A DNA stretch of 64,000 nucleotides from Diplonema japonicum. Lineage: Eukaryota > Protista > Euglenozoa: Diplonemea. The stretch is from contig OZ025672.1 of NCBI GenBank assembly GCA_964019335.1, positions 1-64,000 of the forward strand. The letters are read 5' to 3'. A program made the position numbers and the translations under genes. Of the stretch, positions 4,313-31,958 are shown one piece after another (position 1 is the stretch's first letter; the number at the start of each line of letters is the position of its first letter). The notes beneath the pieces are model-generated. The model made no database searches, was not told where the DNA came from, and saw only the letters and a list, made by a program, of their open reading frames with translations.

Positions 4313-5313
4313 TCCAAAAAATTAATTAGAACAAATAAAAAATTCGCAGTGTTCACCTAATAATCAGGGAAAGAACGGGGTCATATTTACGTCTTGCCTA
4401 TTCTTGCATAAATGGCAGTTAGAGACTCCTTTTGCATTTCCCCTTCGTCTTTACATTTCTTTTTTCTTTTTTTTTTTTATTTGTGCATAGGAAGAAGAGA
4501 GTAAAGACTCCCTAATCTTTTTTTTTTAAAAAAAATGATTTAAAAACGTGCGGGCCCGCGAGAGGTATGGGGAGGGGATCGTGGTGTGCAGGAAAAAAAA
4601 AAAAAAGAAAAAAAAAAAATAATGCAAACCTCATCCCCCTCTACCCTTGATCTTTTTTTTTTTCTGCGGTGCAGAATGTTTTATACACATATGGTCAGTT
4701 AGTTTATACTTGCCCTTTTGGGTCATGTGCACCAAAAGATCTTTTATAAAATGCCGGTATGGGCTCAGTGATGGCAAAGGTACTTGGGTCTCACCTGTAG
4801 AAACCCGCGAAAGCAAGCCTTTCTTTTGACATGTAGATCAATAGCTGGGCAGACAAAAATTCGATAAAGCTCAGTGTGCATGGGGGTGCTACTGTTTATG
4901 TTCATGTTCATGTTCATAAAAATTGACCATATTTGATTTCCCTCCTTTTTTCCCCCTTTTTTTCCCTCTTGTTATCCTCTCCCCCCTCACTCCAAAACAT
5001 CTTTCAAAAAAAAAAATATATGAGTTAACTTAAAGGAAGTCTTTGTGAGACGCCCCCTTGTTCTCATCTTCTACCAAAAAAAAAAAAAAAAAAAAAAAAG
5101 AGATGAGATAAAGGAGGTTCCTGTCTTGGAACGTCCCCCTTGTCTCTTCTTATCTACCCCTTTCTCCCTTCTGGGGCCTCGGCCTTTCTTTCTTTTTTGG
5201 CTGTTGCCTTTCTCAAAGTATCATCTCTTTCTTCTTGCCACTTCCTGCCCAGTTTCTTAAGGTCCTTCTTGGTTTTCTCTGATGCAAAAACTGGCCTTCC
5301 GTTCCATCCATGG

Positions 5314-22224: not shown

Positions 22225-22947
22225 CTTCTTTTATTCTGCTCTTTTTCCTGTTATTTATTAAAGCCACAGCACGATGTTTGCACACCTTCTTTTTTTTAGC
22301 GATAAAAAGAATATCCCAAGAGAAAATAGGAAACGAAATATATAAAAAGAGAGTGGGGGGGGGACGAGAGGGACCGGGTAGCACGACTGAGGCCCTACTG
22401 AAAACCCCCTCATGAAGGGAAAAGGGTCCCTTTTGACTTATGTTGGTTTCTTGTTTGTTTGGTTTGCCCCCCCCCCCCCCCCCCCCCTTTATTTTCCCCC
22501 TTTGTTCTTTCTTTCTCCTTTTTTTTTCAAGAATGAAGAAGGCAGCGAGGAAGAAGAAAGAAGGTTGAGAAAGCCCTTTCCGCAAAAAATAAGAAATGTG
22601 TGCGGTGGATTCTGCCTTCTCTTTGCTTTTTCAACACATCCTCAAGCCTGCCGGTGGGGGGAGGGAGGGGGCGTGAACCGGAACAAAAGTAGGGGAAGTG
22701 GAGAATAGGGGAAACGAAAACTAGACATGTAAAGGCTCGCGTTTCGCATCCACTACAGTTGGGTGCTCCTTGATCTGCTCTGCGGGAGAAATAAATAAGT
22801 GCGTCGTCCTAAGCTCGCTGCCTGCCTTTCAAGGCGGACAGGTCTATGGCTAGTTTTGAAAAAGAAGAAAAAAACAACAACAACAACTACAACAACACAC
22901 CTAAACCTTTTTAGAATACAAACTGGAATAAAAAAAAAAAGACATTT

Positions 22948-22979
22948 AAGGGTACCTGCGGTATGTGGCAGGACGCCTG
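22948..22979. repeat. Dispersed 32-bp hairpin repeat, copy 2
   Basis: Matches 4281-4312; followed by a long A-run. Confidence 0.8.
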
Positions 22980-23138
22980 AAAAAAAAAAAAAAAAAAAAA
23001 AAAAAAAGCACCAAAGCACACAAATCTTTCAGCGAACAACAACCGGTAGCTGCTCTTATCGCTCTTCTTTTTTTTTAAACTCCTTATTACCGCTTTCCCC
23101 CTACTTTTTTGCACTCGGCCAAAAAAAAAAAAAAAAAA

Positions 23139-23661
23139 CTATTCTGTTAACTGAATCGTCCAATACTACCTATAGGCGCTCTTGCAACGACCACCACAGC
23201 CATCGCCAACGTGCCAAAAAATGGGCTAAACTCGCACACTGGTGTGAGCTTCAAGGGAGCTAAACGTTTCAGACATGGCGTGCCACACCCATAGGCCTCA
23301 CGACCGGGGAGGGGGACATTTATCTTTCGCCCGTAAGCTAGAGTGCGCATGCATCCCCAGCTCGCTTTGGGAGGTGTTGCCAACACCTGGGTCGCTTCGC
23401 GGTCCGACCTGCTGCCCAATTCAAAGCGCGGTTGCGGTGAATCCAAGCCCCCTAAGCATCGACACGATTAACAAAGGGGTTTGTTACGCCGGGATATCTT
23501 GTTCACCAATGCTCCATACGCCCCCTGTTGCCAGTTCGCCGGATGAGCATACTGCAGGGTCTTCCACTCATCCGTTGCCCGGTGGGTACCACGAGGAGGT
23601 CAGCAACAATTCTATACTTTTGGCCACGTAGGGCCTGTTCTACATTTAGTATAGTCCCACC
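23139..23661 (-). mobile_element. Ribozyme-headed non-autonomous retroelement, or 5' fragment of a non-LTR retrotransposon
   Basis: GC-balanced, hairpin-rich ~520-nt island between A-runs at 23121-23138 and 23665-23686; its 5' end is an HDV-like ribozyme. Confidence 0.6.
23526..23661 (-). ncRNA. HDV-like self-cleaving ribozyme
   Basis: Minus strand: P1 GGUGGGA/ACCCACC; J1/2 stem CUAUACU/AGUAUAG; P2 UGUUGCUG/UGGCAACA; P3 ACC/GGU; L3 UCCUCGU; P1.1 GG within GGGCAAC; P4 CGGAUGAG/CUCAUCCG; J4/2 GCGAA with catalytic C at 23538. Confidence 0.9.
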
Positions 23662-24237
23662 TTGAAAAAAAAAAAAAAAAAAAAAACCCAGAAATTATTC
23701 CACTCTTAAAAATTACTTCACGCACTCAGGGGGTTACTGTTCGGCCTGTTGGGGATCGCCAACTGAGGTGAGCTTATCTAAGCAAGGGTGAAGTAATCTC
23801 AGAGCGCCGTTACTCTTACCATCCTCTCTCTCGATGGTAATGTGCAGAAAGTTATTTCCTTTGTTTGACATTAAAAAATGGCCGACCTTTTTTAATTTTA
23901 TTCTTTTTTTTTTTCTTCTTTTTTAGTAGAATTGCTTGTACAGCTTGCCCTCGACTTCCCCTCAGAAAAAAAAAAAGAAATAGAAAATCGAGAATATTCT
24001 GTGAGTCAATCGACGAAGTTAGGTGCAAAAAGAAAAAAAAACCCCCCTAAAAACCCCTCAGAAAAATAAAAAAAAAAAAAAAAAAAAACGTTTCTTTTAA
24101 AAAAAAGAAGAGAAGAGCAATAAACCGTGTGTTGATACAAAATTCACTGCCAGTCGCATATCCAGTTTGTTTTTGAATCCTGATTTTGAAAAAGCCTTTG
24201 ATCAGGTCGTCTCTGCATCTCAGGGCTAAACATAAAA

Positions 24238-24264
24238 CTCAAAGTGCAGGACAAACCCCCTCAT
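24238..24264. repeat. Dispersed 27-bp repeat, copy 2
   Basis: Identical to 8568-8594. Confidence 0.8.
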
Positions 24265-24363
24265 AAAAAAAAAATACACGTTTTTTCACACTCGTCGTCT
24301 CATTGAAAACAGAACAGAAAGAGCGGCGGACTCTTTTACTTAAGAAAAGCTCTGACTTTTTTC

Positions 24364-24734: not shown

Positions 24735-26927
24735 CTAAAGGCCAGATAGTACATCTTCTCGCCTCTTGAGCAACCTGTAGAGCTTTTCCACAATGGGGGG
24801 ATGCCTTGTGGTGCGGGACCGCCTTTTCGAGTACTTCTTGAAGCTAGCCTCAAGGGCAGCAAGGCTCGACGTGCACCAGTTATTGTATTCCGCTGCAGGA
24901 AGGCGTTCAAGGTGCCGTCTGAACACCACCTCATCAGACATCCAACTCTGCGACGCCTTCGTTTTCGGGAGCTGCAAACCAGCCTCCGTCAGTACAGCAG
25001 GGATGGTTCCGCAATTCTTACGCAACAGCAAATAAGGCGCATAAAGCGTTTGCAAGTCGTTCAAATACAAACTGAGAGGAAGGTGGAGTGACGCCTGCAC
25101 CCATCTCCGGTCGTGACACTGGCACTGCGGGGTCGACCCACAGTGCGTTCTTACAAAATCATGCCGCAGCAAGGACTGGTTGTCATGCCACCCACATGAC
25201 AGTGTGGCCACTGTACGTTCTTCAGGCAGATATCTGCAACACCCTCCTATAAAGTCCTGAAGACTCTCGCTAAGTACTCCTGGAATCCTGAAATCCCCTA
25301 CACACTCTGCACCTTCGGAAAACGCGTCCAACGGCTTGCACCAAGGCCCCTCTCGATGCCCCGTCGCCAGCCTCAGGATCGTCACCCCAAAGGCCCACAC
25401 ATCAATGGACGTGCTGAACTCCTTCTGGTTCACCACCTGCCGCTCGTCCCCTAATGCCAGACTCGACAAATCGCACAAACTGAAAAAGTTCTCGTCTCCC
25501 AAAATATCACTCGTGTTGTCTGTGAGCTCTGGTGCCTGGAAGTCAGGTGTCGTGATGCCCGATGGCGACACGGCCCTCATCTTCTCGCCCCGCTCTCTGA
25601 AATTCGCCGTCTTGGACGTTCCAAAATCCCCTATCTTGACCTGCCCTTGTTTGTTCACAAGTATGTTCGAAGGCTTTATGTCTTTGTGCACGATGTTCTG
25701 CCTGCGCAGTGCGGACAGCCCGCACCCCACCTGCTGCGCGATGGCGGCAATGACCCCCTCGGGCAGGATGCCCTTCTGCGACTCGTACTCGTCGCCCATC
25801 TCGGTGCGCAGCCAACAGAACTCCGCAATCAGCTTCACAACTGACGGTGCGTCTCGCATGGTAAGGGGAAGCTCTCTGAGTGCAAGGCTGCGTGGACAAC
25901 CGCAGGACAAGCTACACCAAACCCCAGCATAGTAAGGGATGGACGTAGAGGTGGGTGTGGTTGTGCATGTCACGGCGAGGAGGGCAAGGACCGCGACGAC
26001 GGGGGAAGGGAGATCAGACTCTGGAAAGGTGTTACAGAAGGAGGTAGGCACGAACAGAGGAGAGGCTAGCTTGCTTGTTTCCCAGGGCTTCAAAGTCAAG
26101 CCGTGTTTCACAGCGAGCTTGCCGTGTGTCTGCTGATCGATGACCGCAGCCATCATCCTCAGGGACTCGAGCGTCCAGTCCATGTACTCCATCACGAACT
26201 CGACAGCCGCTGTTGGTGCTGCTTTCGTCGTTGGTTGGTTGTCGCCGCCCACAAATCGTGCTCCATAGAAAGGCACGAAGTGCGGTCCTGACAACCAGAT
26301 CCGCCTAAGCTCGCCAACGATCGCCGACACCACACTATTCTGTTCTCCTTCTGACTGTGCATCCACGCCCTCCAGCGCGGCGCACAAAGAGGGGTCGAAC
26401 CCACTCCTGCGGAACGGGATCTGCTTCACAGCGTACGGTGTGCCTTTCAGCGTGCGGAACATGAAAACAAGGCCTTGGCCACCAGACCCGACCTGTATCC
26501 TCCTGTGGTCCCCCGGTGGAGGGCAGCATTCCATGATGCACATCAGGCATCCTTTGCTCCTGCAAGGAAACTTGTGAGCCACCGCTGGGATTGCATCCTT
26601 CCTCAAACCGAAGGGGTTTAGTTTGCCTCCCAGAAGAACTACACACAAAGCACCCGCCACAGTTGCGTACTTCGACAGCCCTTTCTGGTGAAGATTTCGC
26701 TGCCTGTTCCTCAGTGCTTCTCCTCTAGGAGGTGGCGCGACGCCACCTGGTGCTGTGAGCAACCTTGCGTTCCTGATGAAAAACAAGTGCTCGCTTGTCA
26801 CGACAGCAAATACAGGCGGTTGCCCTTCATTTCTAATCTTCAACGACGCGCTGGAGCCGCCTACTTTGAGTTCGTCACCGCCTAAACTTAAAATCCTGTT
26901 CCGCGTTATGGCATCGCATAACACCAT
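24735..26927 (-). CDS. Ser/Thr protein kinase, MAP2K/STE7-like, with large inserts
   Basis: GSGGQG, YAVKQI, MEYMD, HKDIKPSNILVNKQGQVKIGDFG, APE and DVWAFG motifs. Confidence 0.9.
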   Translation of the reverse strand: MVLCDAITRNRILSLGGDELKVGGSSASLKIRNEGQPPVFAVVTSEHLFFIRNARLLTAPGGVAPPPRGEALRNRQRNLHQKGLSKYATVAGALCVVLLGGKLNPFGLRKDAIPAVAHKFPCRSKGCLMCIMECCPPPGDHRRIQVGSGGQGLVFMFRTLKGTPYAVKQIPFRRSGFDPSLCAALEGVDAQSEGEQNSVVSAIVGELRRIWLSGPHFVPFYGARFVGGDNQPTTKAAPTAAVEFVMEYMDWTLESLRMMAAVIDQQTHGKLAVKHGLTLKPWETSKLASPLFVPTSFCNTFPESDLPSPVVAVLALLAVTCTTTPTSTSIPYYAGVWCSLSCGCPRSLALRELPLTMRDAPSVVKLIAEFCWLRTEMGDEYESQKGILPEGVIAAIAQQVGCGLSALRRQNIVHKDIKPSNILVNKQGQVKIGDFGTSKTANFRERGEKMRAVSPSGITTPDFQAPELTDNTSDILGDENFFSLCDLSSLALGDERQVVNQKEFSTSIDVWAFGVTILRLATGHREGPWCKPLDAFSEGAECVGDFRIPGVLSESLQDFIGGCCRYLPEERTVATLSCGWHDNQSLLRHDFVRTHCGSTPQCQCHDRRWVQASLHLPLSLYLNDLQTLYAPYLLLRKNCGTIPAVLTEAGLQLPKTKASQSWMSDEVVFRRHLERLPAAEYNNWCTSSLAALEASFKKYSKRRSRTTRHPPIVEKLYRLLKRREDVLSGL

Positions 26928-30518: not shown

Positions 30519-31892
30519 TCATGCGAAAGACAACATTTCATCGACGGACGTAATCTTTTCGGCAACCTTGTTAAGCTTCTCACCACGAACCTGCTCCTCG
30601 GCCCTTATGGACTGCCATGTGGACCACGTGGTAGGATTCTTAAGGAGTGGGAGGATGGCGGCAGACCCGGCACCAGTGCACGAAGCATCCTGGTTCGCAA
30701 TCGGTGCATCTGTAGCCATGGTGCCGCCCACTGTCTTGCCGTCAACGTGGGCTGCTAAGATGACTCCCACGGGGCCATTCTTCACCCACCCGCTGCAGTA
30801 CGCTCTTGGTAGCGGCTCCCCGTCTTTCATTATCCTTCCCCCCTTGTCAGAAGGCACCACACCTCTCGCGTTGTCGAACGGCACGGTTTCATCTGTCATT
30901 ACCGATCTGTACCCAATACTTCTCAGTACCATGTCCGCGGGGAGTAGCTCAGTGACCCCCGTGTCCTCCACCTTCCCATTCCTTTCATCGCCCGTCACCT
31001 TCATCACACTCACCACCATCCCTTCTTTCGTTACCTCCACAGGCTTGCGAAGGTACCTCACGTGGAACGATCTCTCTTTCTCTTCATTTTTTGAGTTATC
31101 AAGAATAAGAGAAATGAGTCTCTTGTACTTCCTTTCTAGCTCAGACTCGTCGAAGGACAAGATGCCGTCGTGGATGTGTGTCGAGAGGTACTCGTTAGGC
31201 TCCCCCTTGCCACCTGTGTGACCGAGGGAAAGCATCTCACGAAACTCCTTGATGGTGAAGGCTGTGTTTATGATGCCTCTTCTAGCTACAAGGCTCACGT
31301 TGCGGACACCTGAGGTGGCCAGCTCGGAAAGGGACTCCGATGTAATGTCCGTCGGCTGGAGGAGGGACTGCGGGGCGAGCAAGATGCGTGCGCAGTCGAC
31401 TGCAACGTTGCCATTGCCAACGATAAGCACGTTGCGGACCTCCGAGAGAGGGCGGGATGGAGCAGGGGCACCCGGAAGTCCGTTGTACCAAGACACAAAA
31501 GACCTGGCAGACTGCACGTGTTCATCCTCCCCAGGGATATTTAGCTTCTTGTCGTTATCGGCGCCCGTCGCGACGACCACCTGGTGGTAGTTCTCAAGAA
31601 GCTTCGCCACCGTTACCTCCTTCCCAACTTCTACGTTGCCATAGAACTTCACCCTGTCGCTCATGCCCCCCTCAATCATCTCTGTGAAGGTGTTCCCCAC
31701 ATTCTTCACCTCGGGGTGGTCAGGTGCCACGCCGTATCTTGCCAACCCGAAAGGCACTACCATCTTGTCGTACACGTCCACCTCTGAGCCCTCGATGCCC
31801 TTAAGTGCGGCAAGTGCTGTATACCACCCACTAGGCCCGCCGCCCACTACAGCTATCTTGTGAGCCTGGCGCAGCATGTTCGAGCGCATCAT
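30519..31892 (-). CDS. FDXR: NADPH:adrenodoxin oxidoreductase, mitochondrial
   Basis: VVGGGPSG, PFGLARYGVAPDHPEVKNV, IVGNGNVAVDCARIL, FTIKEFRE, RSIGYRS and GWVKNGPVGVI. Confidence 0.93.
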   Translation of the reverse strand: MMRSNMLRQAHKIAVVGGGPSGWYTALAALKGIEGSEVDVYDKMVVPFGLARYGVAPDHPEVKNVGNTFTEMIEGGMSDRVKFYGNVEVGKEVTVAKLLENYHQVVVATGADNDKKLNIPGEDEHVQSARSFVSWYNGLPGAPAPSRPLSEVRNVLIVGNGNVAVDCARILLAPQSLLQPTDITSESLSELATSGVRNVSLVARRGIINTAFTIKEFREMLSLGHTGGKGEPNEYLSTHIHDGILSFDESELERKYKRLISLILDNSKNEEKERSFHVRYLRKPVEVTKEGMVVSVMKVTGDERNGKVEDTGVTELLPADMVLRSIGYRSVMTDETVPFDNARGVVPSDKGGRIMKDGEPLPRAYCSGWVKNGPVGVILAAHVDGKTVGGTMATDAPIANQDASCTGAGSAAILPLLKNPTTWSTWQSIRAEEQVRGEKLNKVAEKITSVDEMLSFA

Positions 31893-31958
31893 TTTATCTA
31901 AAAGTAAGCGTTTGTCGCTACTGAAATATTTCAAAAACACATATTGGTTAGCCACAGA

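What the first reader, a model, noticed from the sequence alone, without database searches (positions are those of the whole stretch)
23526..23661. Complete HDV-like self-cleaving ribozyme in an intergenic spacer, on the same strand as all the genes
Seen: the minus strand reads GGUGGGA-[CUAUACU...AGUAUAG]-AAU-UGUUGCUG-ACC-UCCUCGU-GGU-ACCCACC-GG-GCAA-CGGAUGAG...CUCAUCCG-GCGAA-C-UGGCAACA. All five helices of the nested double pseudoknot (P1, P1.1, P2, P3, P4) are present in the right order. Known: CCUCCUCG in P3/L3, GGGCAAC after P1 and GGCGAA with the catalytic C match the genomic HDV ribozyme, and a mismatch at the top of P1 also occurs in the CPEB3 ribozyme. Inference: it cuts 5' of G23661. 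It lies about 1.07 kb past the kinase stop codon, so it would cut the polycistronic pre-mRNA or the kinase 3' UTR. Its sequence is unlike the ingi/L1Tc Pr77 ribozyme as I recall it, so it may be a new family in this lineage.
Basis: partly seen in the sequence, partly recalled or inferred. Interest (0 to 1): 0.92.

Follow-up and report, generated by a model that had tools for sequence, protein, structure and literature searches.

The report
Ribozyme-headed short retroposon copy
The stretch is a well-formed HDV-like self-cleaving ribozyme, but it is the 5' head of a 523-base mobile element present in about 20 copies, a known way for retroposons to cut themselves out of host transcripts, seen here in an unstudied protist.

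Summary
Minus strand 23661-23526 contains all five HDV helices, the L3/P1.1 core and the J4/2 catalytic C (23538). A structure descriptor finds only this site in the window, and no shuffle matches its quality.

The interpretation needs correcting in three ways:
- It is not a lone intergenic ribozyme. G23661 is the first base of a 523-nt non-coding retroposon (23661-23139) with about 20 copies, ten or more of them at least 98.5% identical.
- Its last 12 nt match, 11 of 12, the 3' end of a 6.5-kb APE/RT LINE that carries its own HDV-like ribozyme.
- The host is not a trypanosomatid. Its best named protein match is Diplonema.

Four element families, one with at least 746 copies, keep the same catalytic core but have entirely different, still complementary, P1, P2 and P4. 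All start exactly at G1, after a T-run and a variable 0-5-nt junction. This points to cleavage at the predicted site in vivo.

No Rfam model reaches its gathering score, no raw RNA reads were available, and P1 has an A-A mismatch, so cleavage by this copy is inferred.

It is a new member of a known kind (R2/SIDE, L1Tc/NARTc). Other first-stage notes of this scan flagged the same families elsewhere in this genome.

The parts
23665..23686 (-). 22-nt T-run immediately upstream of the element. It is the remnant of the polypyrimidine target tract.
   Evidence: Every copy of every family is preceded by a T-rich tract of variable length and composition.
23662..23664 (-). Variable 5' junction nucleotides, CAA in this copy. 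With G1 they read AAG|G, and in most copies CAG|G, which is a possible spliced-leader acceptor.
   Evidence: The junction differs between copies: CA, none, CAA, CG, CTTCA. The same heterogeneity is seen in about 50 family-3 sites.
23526..23661 (-). HDV-like ribozyme, 136 nt. P1 23661-23655/23587-23581; J1/2 insert 23654-23609; P2 23608-23601/23533-23526; P3 23600-23598/23590-23588; L3 23597-23591; P1.1 23596-23595/23580-23579; P4 23574-23567/23547-23540; J4/2 23539-23534. Predicted cleavage is 5' of G23661.
   Evidence: P1 covariation across four families is read directly.
23538..23538 (-). Candidate catalytic cytosine, the equivalent of C75 in HDV, within GCGAA.
   Evidence: The motif (G/A)CGAA is present at this position in all four families.
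23139..23525 (-). Non-coding body and 3' end of the retroposon. The whole element is 23661-23139, 523 nt.
   Evidence: Copies align from G1 to ...CAGAAUAG at 85-99.8% identity. There is no ATG-initiated ORF of length, no tRNA and no Rfam match.
23147..23315 (-). 3' module of about 170 nt. It also occurs, at 91-94% identity and without the LINE-like tail, about 600 nt downstream of tandemly repeated BspA-type LRR genes.
23139..23150 (-). Terminal 12 nt, UUAACAGAAUAG. The LINE ends in UUAAAAGAAUAG, so 11 of 12 positions match. Probable recognition tail for the LINE reverse transcriptase.
23121..23138 (-). 18-nt T-run after the 3' end. It is a target-site duplication and/or an oligo(U) tail copy.
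   Evidence: The length varies from 6 to more than 40 T between copies and is often interrupted. LINE copy L075 has only T6.
22941..22979 (-). 5'-truncated 3' end of a second, abundant ribozyme-headed family (family 3). It follows a T30 run (23010-22981) and is followed by another T-run.
   Evidence: One search compared with the family-3 3' end.

Best explanation
Window 23661-23139 (minus strand) is one recent copy of a 523-nt non-autonomous (SINE-like) non-LTR retroposon. Its first 136 nt fold into an HDV-like self-cleaving ribozyme.

Proposed life cycle:
1. Copies lie in the sense orientation inside polycistronic Pol II units, so they need no promoter. This is shown for orientation and inferred for transcription.
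2. The ribozyme cuts 5' of G1 and removes all upstream host RNA, which defines the element's 5' end. This is inferred from copy boundaries, not from an assay.
3. A 6.5-kb APE-endonuclease/RT LINE, which has its own HDV-like ribozyme and the same ...AGAAUAG 3' end, recognises the tail. It reverse-transcribes the RNA at a nick in a T/A tract. This leaves T-runs on both sides and a few untemplated bases before G1. This step is inferred.

At this locus the ribozyme would also sever the primary transcript 1.07 kb past the kinase stop codon. That is a side effect in a spacer that is processed anyway.
For: 1. The fold is present and beyond chance. Three Rfam HDV models converge on the core.
2. Repeat family: about 20 head-bearing copies, ten or more at 98.5-99.8% identity, each spanning G1 to CAGAATAG.
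3. Conservation begins exactly at G1. The bases between the T-run and G1 vary (CA, none, CAA, CG). The same is true for about 50 listed sites of a family with at least 746 copies. R2 shows the same pattern, where self-cleavage stops junction bases from being inherited (PMC3774820).
4. Four families share ACC-UCCxxGx-GGU, the P1.1 GG and (G/A)CGAA, but have different, complementary helices. P1 is GGUGGGA/ACCCACC, GGGGUUC/GAACCCC, GGUGGUG/CAUCACC and GGGGACC/GGUUCCU.
5. P2, P3 and P4 together: 92% of cells paired, against 24-50% when the pairing partner is slid. 12 of 19 pairs show compensatory changes, and 0 of 500 shuffles do as well.
6. Orientation:
 - The LINE ORFs (ORF1 759 aa; ORF2 1,374 aa with Exo_endo_phos and RVT_1) are on the ribozyme strand.
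 - The LINE ends ...UUAAAAGAAUAG-T(n), against the SINE's ...UUAACAGAAUAG-T(n).
 - A 5'-truncated copy keeps the 3' end (L079).
7. In copies L001-L014, every flanking open frame of 200 aa or more is on the element's sense strand, with one ambiguous case.
8. Eight retrocopies of the sister family carry a spliced leader fused at G1 or G2. This shows sense Pol II transcripts of such elements exist.
Against: - No biochemical or raw-read evidence of cleavage. Only assembled contigs of uncertain kind were available, and they are uninformative.
- All Rfam scores are below gathering: 21.7 of 50 bits here, and 22.3 of 44 even for the compact family-4 ribozyme.
- P1 of this family has an A-A mismatch at the top. 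Its base pair is G1-C rather than the G-U wobble. P1 mismatches have abolished in vitro activity in some HDV-like ribozymes (PMC3774820).
- Within family 1 there is no covariation. Diverged copies simply decay.
- The alignment used for pair counts was fitted to the model's structure.
- The LINE-SINE partnership rests on a 12-nt shared tail only. BLAST finds no other similarity.
- No spliced-leader-fused copy and no expression evidence exist for family 1 itself.
Confidence: 0.85

Rival explanations
1. The element's 5' end is defined by spliced-leader trans-splicing at the T-run plus AG just before G1. On this view the HDV-like motif is incidental or serves another role, such as RT binding or translation.
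For: - T-run plus CA plus G1 reads as a textbook polypyrimidine/AG acceptor.
- Eight family-3 retrocopies carry the spliced leader joined at G1 or G2.
Against: - Only 8 of at least 746 family-3 heads carry the leader, and none of family 1. Spliced RNAs would give leader-bearing copies.
- Splicing does not explain why four families keep the catalytic core while P1, P2 and P4 covary.
- Copies with no A before G1 (T-run directly on G1) still start at G1.
Confidence: 0.06
2. This is a host-domesticated regulatory ribozyme that controls the kinase mRNA 3' end.
For: It lies on the same strand, 1.07 kb after the kinase stop codon.
Against: - The sequence is one of ten or more near-identical copies scattered over many contigs next to unrelated genes.
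- The copy is young, which leaves no sign of locus-specific conservation.
- Older copies decay freely.
Confidence: 0.04
3. A plus-strand poly(A)-tailed SINE (23147 to 23663, then A22) whose antisense strand only happens to resemble an HDV ribozyme.
For: On the plus strand the element is followed by an A22 run and preceded by an A18 run, like an L1-type insertion.
Against: - The LINE with the same tail and the same flanking T-runs has its ORFs on the ribozyme strand.
- Truncated copies lack the ribozyme end and keep the CAGAATAG end.
- The runs are often impure or as short as T6, unlike a poly(A) tail.
- Covariation across families supports a functional fold.
Confidence: 0.02
4. The fold is real for the family, but this lineage's ribozyme is catalytically weak or dead because of the P1 A-A mismatch. 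Copies would then spread by another route.
For: P1 mismatches are uncommon and have abolished in vitro cleavage in horseshoe-crab R2 and other HDV-like ribozymes (PMC3774820).
Against: - Ten or more copies at 98.5-99.8% identity show recent, repeated retroposition with the mismatch present in all of them.
- All of these copies begin at G1.
Confidence: 0.1

Closest known systems
R2 retrotransposon ribozyme and its non-autonomous SIDE derivatives (arthropods)
   Same: - An HDV-like ribozyme at the 5' end releases the element RNA from a host co-transcript.
- The J1/2 insert is large (216-498 nt in silkmoth R2).
- Non-templated 5' junction bases are variable and are not inherited.
- Non-autonomous elements use the same machinery (PMC3774820, PMC3414825).
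   Different: - R2 has a restriction-like endonuclease and a single 28S rDNA target, and is co-transcribed by Pol I.
- Here the partner is an APE-type two-ORF LINE, the targets are dispersed T-tracts, and the copies lie in Pol II polycistrons.
- The short element carries a ribozyme whose helices differ from those of the LINE.
L1Tc/NARTc, ingi/RIME and SIDER with the Pr77/L1TcRz HDV-like ribozyme (trypanosomatids)
   Same: - A euglenozoan host with polycistronic transcription.
- LINE plus short non-autonomous partners, each headed by an HDV-like ribozyme that cuts at +1 (PMC3185411, PMC4035085).
   Different: - Pr77 ribozymes start with C1, are 77-96 nt long and are shared by LINE and SINE. They double as an internal promoter, and the elements end in poly(A).
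- Here +1 is G and the core is the canonical HDV/drz-Agam type.
- The LINE and SINE ribozymes differ in every helix, there is no poly(A), and the flanks are T-runs.
- LINE ORF2 has no close relative among 5.8 billion proteins (best 25% identity).
drz-Agam-1 (RF01787) and genomic HDV ribozyme (RF00094)
   Same: - The P3-L3-P3' segment ACCUCCUCGUGGU is identical to the drz-Agam-1 consensus.
- GGGCAAC and GGCGAA match HDV.
- The G1-C pair at the base of P1 is as in the drz-Agam-1 and RF02682 consensus (alignments).
   Different: - The 46-nt J1/2 insertion and the different P1, P2 and P4 keep the scores at 15-22 bits, far below gathering.
- P1 has an A-A mismatch.

Membership tests
HDV-like self-cleaving ribozymes (structural class) | Nested double pseudoknot with P1, P1.1, P2, P3 and P4 in the canonical order. 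| tested here: met
   All helices were read on the sequence and recovered by an independent descriptor scan. P2, P3 and P4 are supported by covariation. P1 is supported by four different complementary pairs of strands.
HDV-like self-cleaving ribozymes (structural class) | Catalytic cytosine in J4/2, and two L3 cytosines pairing with the GG after P1 (P1.1). | tested here: met
   GCGAA with C23538. C23596-23595 pair with G23580-23579. Both features are conserved in all four families.
HDV-like self-cleaving ribozymes (structural class) | Self-cleavage immediately 5' of the first P1 nucleotide, giving 5'-OH and 2',3'-cyclic phosphate ends. | not testable with these tools
   Indirect evidence only. 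Retroposed copies of all families begin exactly at G1 behind variable junction bases. No raw RNA reads were available.
HDV-like self-cleaving ribozymes (structural class) | Fully paired 7-bp P1, usually with a G-U wobble at its base. | tested here: inconclusive
   6 of 7 positions pair, with A-A at the top, and G1-C81 instead of G-U. G-C at this position occurs in the RF01787 and RF02682 consensus. Mismatches can be harmful (PMC3774820).
Rfam RF00094, RF01787 and RF02682 | Covariance-model score at or above the curated gathering threshold. | tested here: not met
   21.7 of 50, 15.7 of 37 and 18.9 of 44 bits. There were 0 hits at gathering thresholds. The models cannot bridge the J1/2 insert, so the P1 5' strand is left unaligned.
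Ribozyme-headed non-LTR retroposons (R2/SIDE, RTE, L1Tc/NARTc type) | The ribozyme forms the exact 5' end of a dispersed repeat. | tested here: met
Ribozyme-headed non-LTR retroposons (R2/SIDE, RTE, L1Tc/NARTc type) | An autonomous partner that encodes endonuclease and RT and shares the 3' end. | tested here: met
   L075 has ORF2 with Exo_endo_phos and RVT_1. The terminal 12 nt are 11 of 12 identical. The partnership is inferred from the tail only.
Ribozyme-headed non-LTR retroposons (R2/SIDE, RTE, L1Tc/NARTc type) | Marks of target-primed reverse transcription: flanking duplication, 5' truncation and variable 5' junction. | tested here: met
   T-runs lie on both sides. There is a 5'-truncated copy, L079. 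Junctions are variable. The exact length of the duplication cannot be read inside homopolymers.
Trypanosomatid Pr77 hallmark (L1TcRz) | A 77-nt signature starting with C1, shared by the LINE and its SINE. | tested here: not met
   +1 is G. The LINE and SINE ribozymes differ in P1, P2 and P4. Pr77 ribozymes cut before C1 (PMC4035085). The Pr77 sequence itself was not aligned here.

The most novel reading that the evidence does not exclude
A whole guild of retroposons (at least 4 families, at least 750 copies) in a diplonemid-like euglenozoan lives on the host's trans-splicing system.
- They land in the polypyrimidine tracts that direct spliced-leader addition.
- They are transcribed only as passengers of polycistronic units.
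- They prime reverse transcription by pairing a read-through oligo(U) tail with the A-strand of the target.
- They use HDV-like ribozymes to shed the upstream RNA.
- Ribozyme cleavage and leader addition compete at the same nucleotide (CAG|G1), and the leader-fused retrocopies are the record of the losing events.
Probability: 0.3. Interest if true: 0.7.

Novelty: new member of a known kind. Interest (0 to 1): 0.45.

Why it matters
- Canonical HDV-type ribozymes are abundant in a euglenozoan lineage outside the trypanosomatids. I found no paper in the library reporting ribozymes there. The Diplonema genome paper does not mention them and leaves transposable elements uncharacterised.
- It gives a clean natural set for ribozyme work: four helix-divergent, core-identical variants, with J1/2 from 4 to 69 nt.
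- It explains many poly(T)-flanked repeats that would otherwise confuse annotation of intergenic regions and 3' UTRs in this genome.
- The cleavage site coincides with a spliced-leader acceptor, which offers a testable case of competition between RNA self-cleavage and trans-splicing.
- For the kinase gene itself, nothing special is implied.

Tried and rejected
- Rfam at gathering thresholds: nothing.
- Rfam on the element body and ARAGORN: no tRNA, 5S or 7SL origin detected.
- MFE z-score: uninformative for a pseudoknot.
- MAFFT alignment of families 1 and 2 misaligns P4 and J4/2, so it was not used for pair counts.
- A full-length covariance model (R2) put family-3 P1 in a register shifted by 3 nt and missed families 2 and 4. 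P1 covariation is therefore reported from direct reading, not from that alignment.
- My first descriptor was too loose, at 0.6 strict hits per shuffled window. I replaced it with a quality score.
- Sequencing runs: only Logan contigs of uncertain kind. They cover the repeat but not the flanks, and cannot show RNA ends.
Orientation was therefore judged from 1.5-kb flanks only, and the more than 100 family-3 hits were not aligned.
- Plus-strand poly(A) SINE reading: considered seriously and rejected on the LINE ORF orientation and the truncation pattern.
- Spliced-leader-fused copies of family 1: none found.
- The LINE clade could not be assigned; ORF2 has only three distant hits.

Full report
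**1. The observation**

I numbered it 1-136 from G23661.
- P1: 1-7 with 75-81, GGUGGGA/ACCCACC. Six pairs plus A7-A75.
- J1/2: a 46-nt insert, 8-53, with the 7-bp hairpin CUAUACU/AGUAUAG.
- P2: 54-61 with 129-136.
- P3: 62-64 with 72-74, ACC/GGU.
- L3: UCCUCGU.
- P1.1: C66-C67 with G82-G83.
- GCAA follows P1.1.
- P4: 88-95 with 115-122.
- J4/2: GCGAAC, with C124 at window position 23538.

The kinase ORF (Pkinase) stops at 24735, 1,074 nt upstream. All long ORFs between 13 and 34 kb are on the minus strand.

**2. Is it more than chance?**

- Rfam at curated thresholds finds nothing in the window.
- In E-value mode, three HDV-type models all land on the core and all end at 23526. The scores are 21.7, 18.9 and 15.7 bits, well under their cut-offs. 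The alignments show why: the models cannot reach across the J1/2 insert to the P1 5' strand.
- I wrote an HDV descriptor. It requires P1 of 7 with at most one mismatch and G at +1. It allows J1/2 up to 90 nt and asks for a 3-bp P3. L3 must have CC at positions 2-3, and GG must follow P1'. It also needs P4, J4/2 and P2. It returns one strict hit in both strands of the window, at 23661-23526.
- The bare descriptor is loose, giving 0.6 strict hits per shuffled window, so I scored quality.
  - The real site has 22 helix pairs (P1 + P2 + P4).
  - In 200 dinucleotide shuffles, no hit with a CNAA J4/2 exceeded 20.
  - Only 6 of 1,954 relaxed hits had L3 beginning UCCUCG.
- The nested minimum-energy fold is not unusual (z = -0.34). 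For a double pseudoknot this says nothing either way.

**3. What it belongs to**

- A search of the window's own 62.5-Mb genome with 201 nt around the site gave 41 matches.
- Pairwise alignment shows a repeat running from G1 to ...CAGAAUAG at 23139, 523 nt in all. Ten or more copies are 98.5-99.8% identical, and others are 85-95%.
- The element has no long ATG ORF, no tRNA and no Rfam match in its body.
- Upstream of every copy is a T-rich tract of variable length and purity, followed by 0-5 variable bases: CA most often, or none, CAA, CG, CTTCA. Then comes the invariant GGUGGGA.
- Downstream of CAGAAUAG there is again a T-run, from 10 to more than 40 nt and sometimes interrupted.
- The predicted cleavage site is therefore also the first conserved base of the repeat. 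This line of evidence is independent of the fold.

**4. Orientation and partner**

Because A-runs flank the element on the plus strand, I considered a plus-strand poly(A) SINE with a chance antisense motif. A pattern search for the L3/P1.1 core settled this.
- It revealed a second family whose head is GGGGUUC...GAACCCC.
- That head opens a 6.5-kb element with ORF1 (759 aa, OTU-like domain) and ORF2 (1,374 aa, Exo_endo_phos plus RVT_1), both on the ribozyme strand.
- The ORF1 AUG lies inside the J1/2 insert.
- This LINE is also preceded by T-run plus CA. It ends ...CCUUAAAAGAAUAG followed by T6 to T19.
- The short element ends ...CAGUUAACAGAAUAG, so the last 12 nt are 11 of 12 identical.
- A 5'-truncated copy of the short element keeps this 3' end (L079).

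The element is therefore sense on the ribozyme strand, and the T-runs are the target (duplication and/or oligo(U) tail). The short element is most simply a non-autonomous passenger of this LINE or a close relative. That partnership rests on the shared tail only, because BLAST finds no other similarity.

**5. Comparative support for the fold**

- A covariance model of the 86-nt core, run on the whole genome, returned at least 149 hits, which is the scoring cap.
- The hits comprise about 22 family-1 copies and a very abundant 89-nt type.
- The head of this third family, GUGGUGGGGAUAAC, occurs 746 times, against 1 for the control. The element is about 340 bp and ends ...CCCUUAAAUAGUCUC-T(n).
- A fourth, compact ribozyme of 74 nt with a 4-nt J1/2 lies at L009:1047-1120. 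It aligns end to end with RF02682 with no non-canonical pair flagged, but scores 22.3 of 44 bits.

| Family | P1 5' strand / 3' strand |
|---|---|
| 1 (this element) | GGUGGGA / ACCCACC |
| 2 (LINE) | GGGGUUC / GAACCCC |
| 3 (about 340 bp, at least 746 copies) | GGUGGUG / CAUCACC |
| 4 (compact, 74 nt) | GGGGACC / GGUUCCU |

- P2 and P4 are unrelated in sequence between families, yet complementary in each.
- P3 (ACC/GGU), the L3 start UCC, the P1.1 GG and (G/A)CGAA are constant.
- On the model-derived alignment of ten distinct rows, 92% of cells pair, against 24-50% when the partner is slid by 1-3 columns. 12 of 19 pairs carry compensatory double changes, and 0 of 500 shuffles do as well on any of the five measures. 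The caveat is that this alignment was fitted to the model's structure.
- Within family 1 there is no covariation. Old copies simply decay by deletions through P1', P4 and J4/2, as expected if only source copies are under selection.

**6. Evidence that the 5' end is made at G1 in vivo**

- Among about 50 distinct family-3 sites listed, the bases between the T-run and G1 are CA (about a third), AA, A, none, AAA and assorted others. G1 onward is invariant.
- This is the pattern described for R2. There, 5' junctions carry non-templated bases that are not propagated, because self-cleavage removes everything upstream (PMC3774820).
- That paper also documents J1/2 loops of 216-498 nt, so a 46-nt insert is unremarkable.
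- It warns that P1 mismatches are uncommon and can abolish in vitro activity. That is the main caveat for family 1, with its A-A at the top of P1.

**7. Relation to host transcription**

- In copies L001-L014, every flanking open frame of 200 aa or more lies on the element's sense strand, apart from one ambiguous locus. Copies are therefore co-oriented with the host gene arrays.
- T-run plus CA plus G1 reads CAG|G, a polypyrimidine/AG acceptor.
- While checking the organism, I found the 3' part of the spliced leader at 337 dispersed sites, against 2 for the control.
- One of these sites has the full leader...ACCAACGAUUCUAAAGCUACAGUUUCUGUACUUUAUUG, fused directly to the family-3 head (L032).
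- Genome-wide there are eight such fusions, five at G2 and three at G1. There are none for family 1.
- These fusions are retrocopies of trans-spliced element RNAs. They show that sense Pol II transcripts of such elements exist and that splicing can occur at the ribozyme's own cleavage site.
- Their rarity (8 of at least 746) argues that the usual 5' end is not made by splicing.

**8. Organism**

- An FDXR-like ORF (30519-31955, minus strand) matches a EukProt transcriptome at 76% identity.
- Among named proteins it matches Diplonema papillatum best, at 57%. The next named hits are animals at about 42%, and no kinetoplastid appears among the 120 listed.
- From memory, the leader's ACCAACGAUU start resembles the diplonemid rather than the kinetoplastid type.
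- I therefore call the host a diplonemid-like euglenozoan. The species was not determined.
- The D. papillatum genome paper reports polycistronic arrays, universal spliced-leader addition and about 2,500 retroelement gene models. It makes no mention of ribozymes and gives no curated elements (PMC10161547).
- LINE ORF2 has only three distant hits (25% identity or less) among 5.8 billion proteins.

**9. RNA evidence**

- The run search returned only Logan contigs, and none is on record as RNA.
- Laid on 22800-24300, three small runs cover only the repeat (23150-23654) and another repeat near 24230-24264. They do not cover the unique flanks.
- One large run covers the flanks at about 400 and the repeat far deeper.
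- Contigs cannot show RNA ends, and low-coverage DNA would look the same. I draw nothing from this.

**10. Verdict**

It is wrong about the context (a mobile element, not a gene-specific device), about the lineage, and about novelty.
- The arrangement is the established one of R2/SIDE and L1Tc/NARTc. The differences are an APE-type LINE of unknown clade, T-tract targets without poly(A), and a short element whose ribozyme shares only the catalytic core with that of the LINE.
- Cleavage by this particular copy is inferred, not shown.
- Other first-stage notes of this scan flagged the same stretch and sister families elsewhere in this genome. I reached families 2-4 independently.

Noticed in passing
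L032:1463-1520 (G000:C1:~890240-890307); 8 sites genome-wide: A full spliced-leader sequence is fused directly to the head of the abundant ribozyme-headed family, at G1 (3 sites) or G2 (5 sites). These are retrocopies of trans-spliced element RNA. The acceptor AG overlaps the ribozyme cleavage site.
   Followed up: partly
whole genome G000: The 3' 16 nt of the spliced leader occur at 337 dispersed sites, against 2 for the control. L031 and L033 show the leader fused to other sequences, which suggests widespread retroposition of trans-spliced RNAs.
   Followed up: no
L075:258-2537: LINE ORF1 carries an OTU-like cysteine protease domain (29.4 bits, cut-off 23.3). Its AUG lies inside the J1/2 insert of the LINE's own HDV-like ribozyme, so the reading frame runs through the ribozyme core.
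   Followed up: partly
window 23147-23315 (-); L077:4252-4426, L078:1991-2165 and 4562-4735, L080:1595-1769: The 3' third of the short element is 91-94% identical to a segment about 600 nt downstream of tandemly repeated BspA-type LRR genes (8.1-kb period on C66, several on C95). That segment lacks the CAGAAUAG tail. The element may have captured a host 3' flank, or the reverse.
   Followed up: partly
window 22941-22979 (-), after the T30 run 22981-23010: A short 5'-truncated 3' end of the abundant family-3 element (...CCCUUAAAUGUC then a T-run) lies 160 nt downstream of the studied copy. T-tracts appear to be repeatedly hit.
   Followed up: partly
L009:1047-1120: A compact 74-nt HDV-like ribozyme (family 4) lies directly after a T-run, about 480 nt upstream of a family-1 copy. 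It has a 4-nt J1/2 and a G1-U wobble, and aligns end to end to RF02682 at 22.3 bits.
   Followed up: partly
L067:1427-1835: An internally deleted derivative of the LINE, about 410 bp, that keeps the ribozyme head and the ...UUAAAAGAAUAG tail. This is a second route to non-autonomous elements, like NARTc or SIDE.
   Followed up: no
window 24230-24264: A short stretch covered at repeat-like depth in all runs that hold the element, with different continuations on both sides (loose ends GGAGGGCCGCCC...). It is probably another dispersed repeat. It was not identified.
   Followed up: no
G000, about 150 or more RVT_1 hits: There are many intact LINE ORFs of several size classes (about 1,430-1,480 aa and about 2,000 aa), clustered on contigs C51, C52, C61 and C95. 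Their 5' ends were not examined for ribozymes.
   Followed up: no
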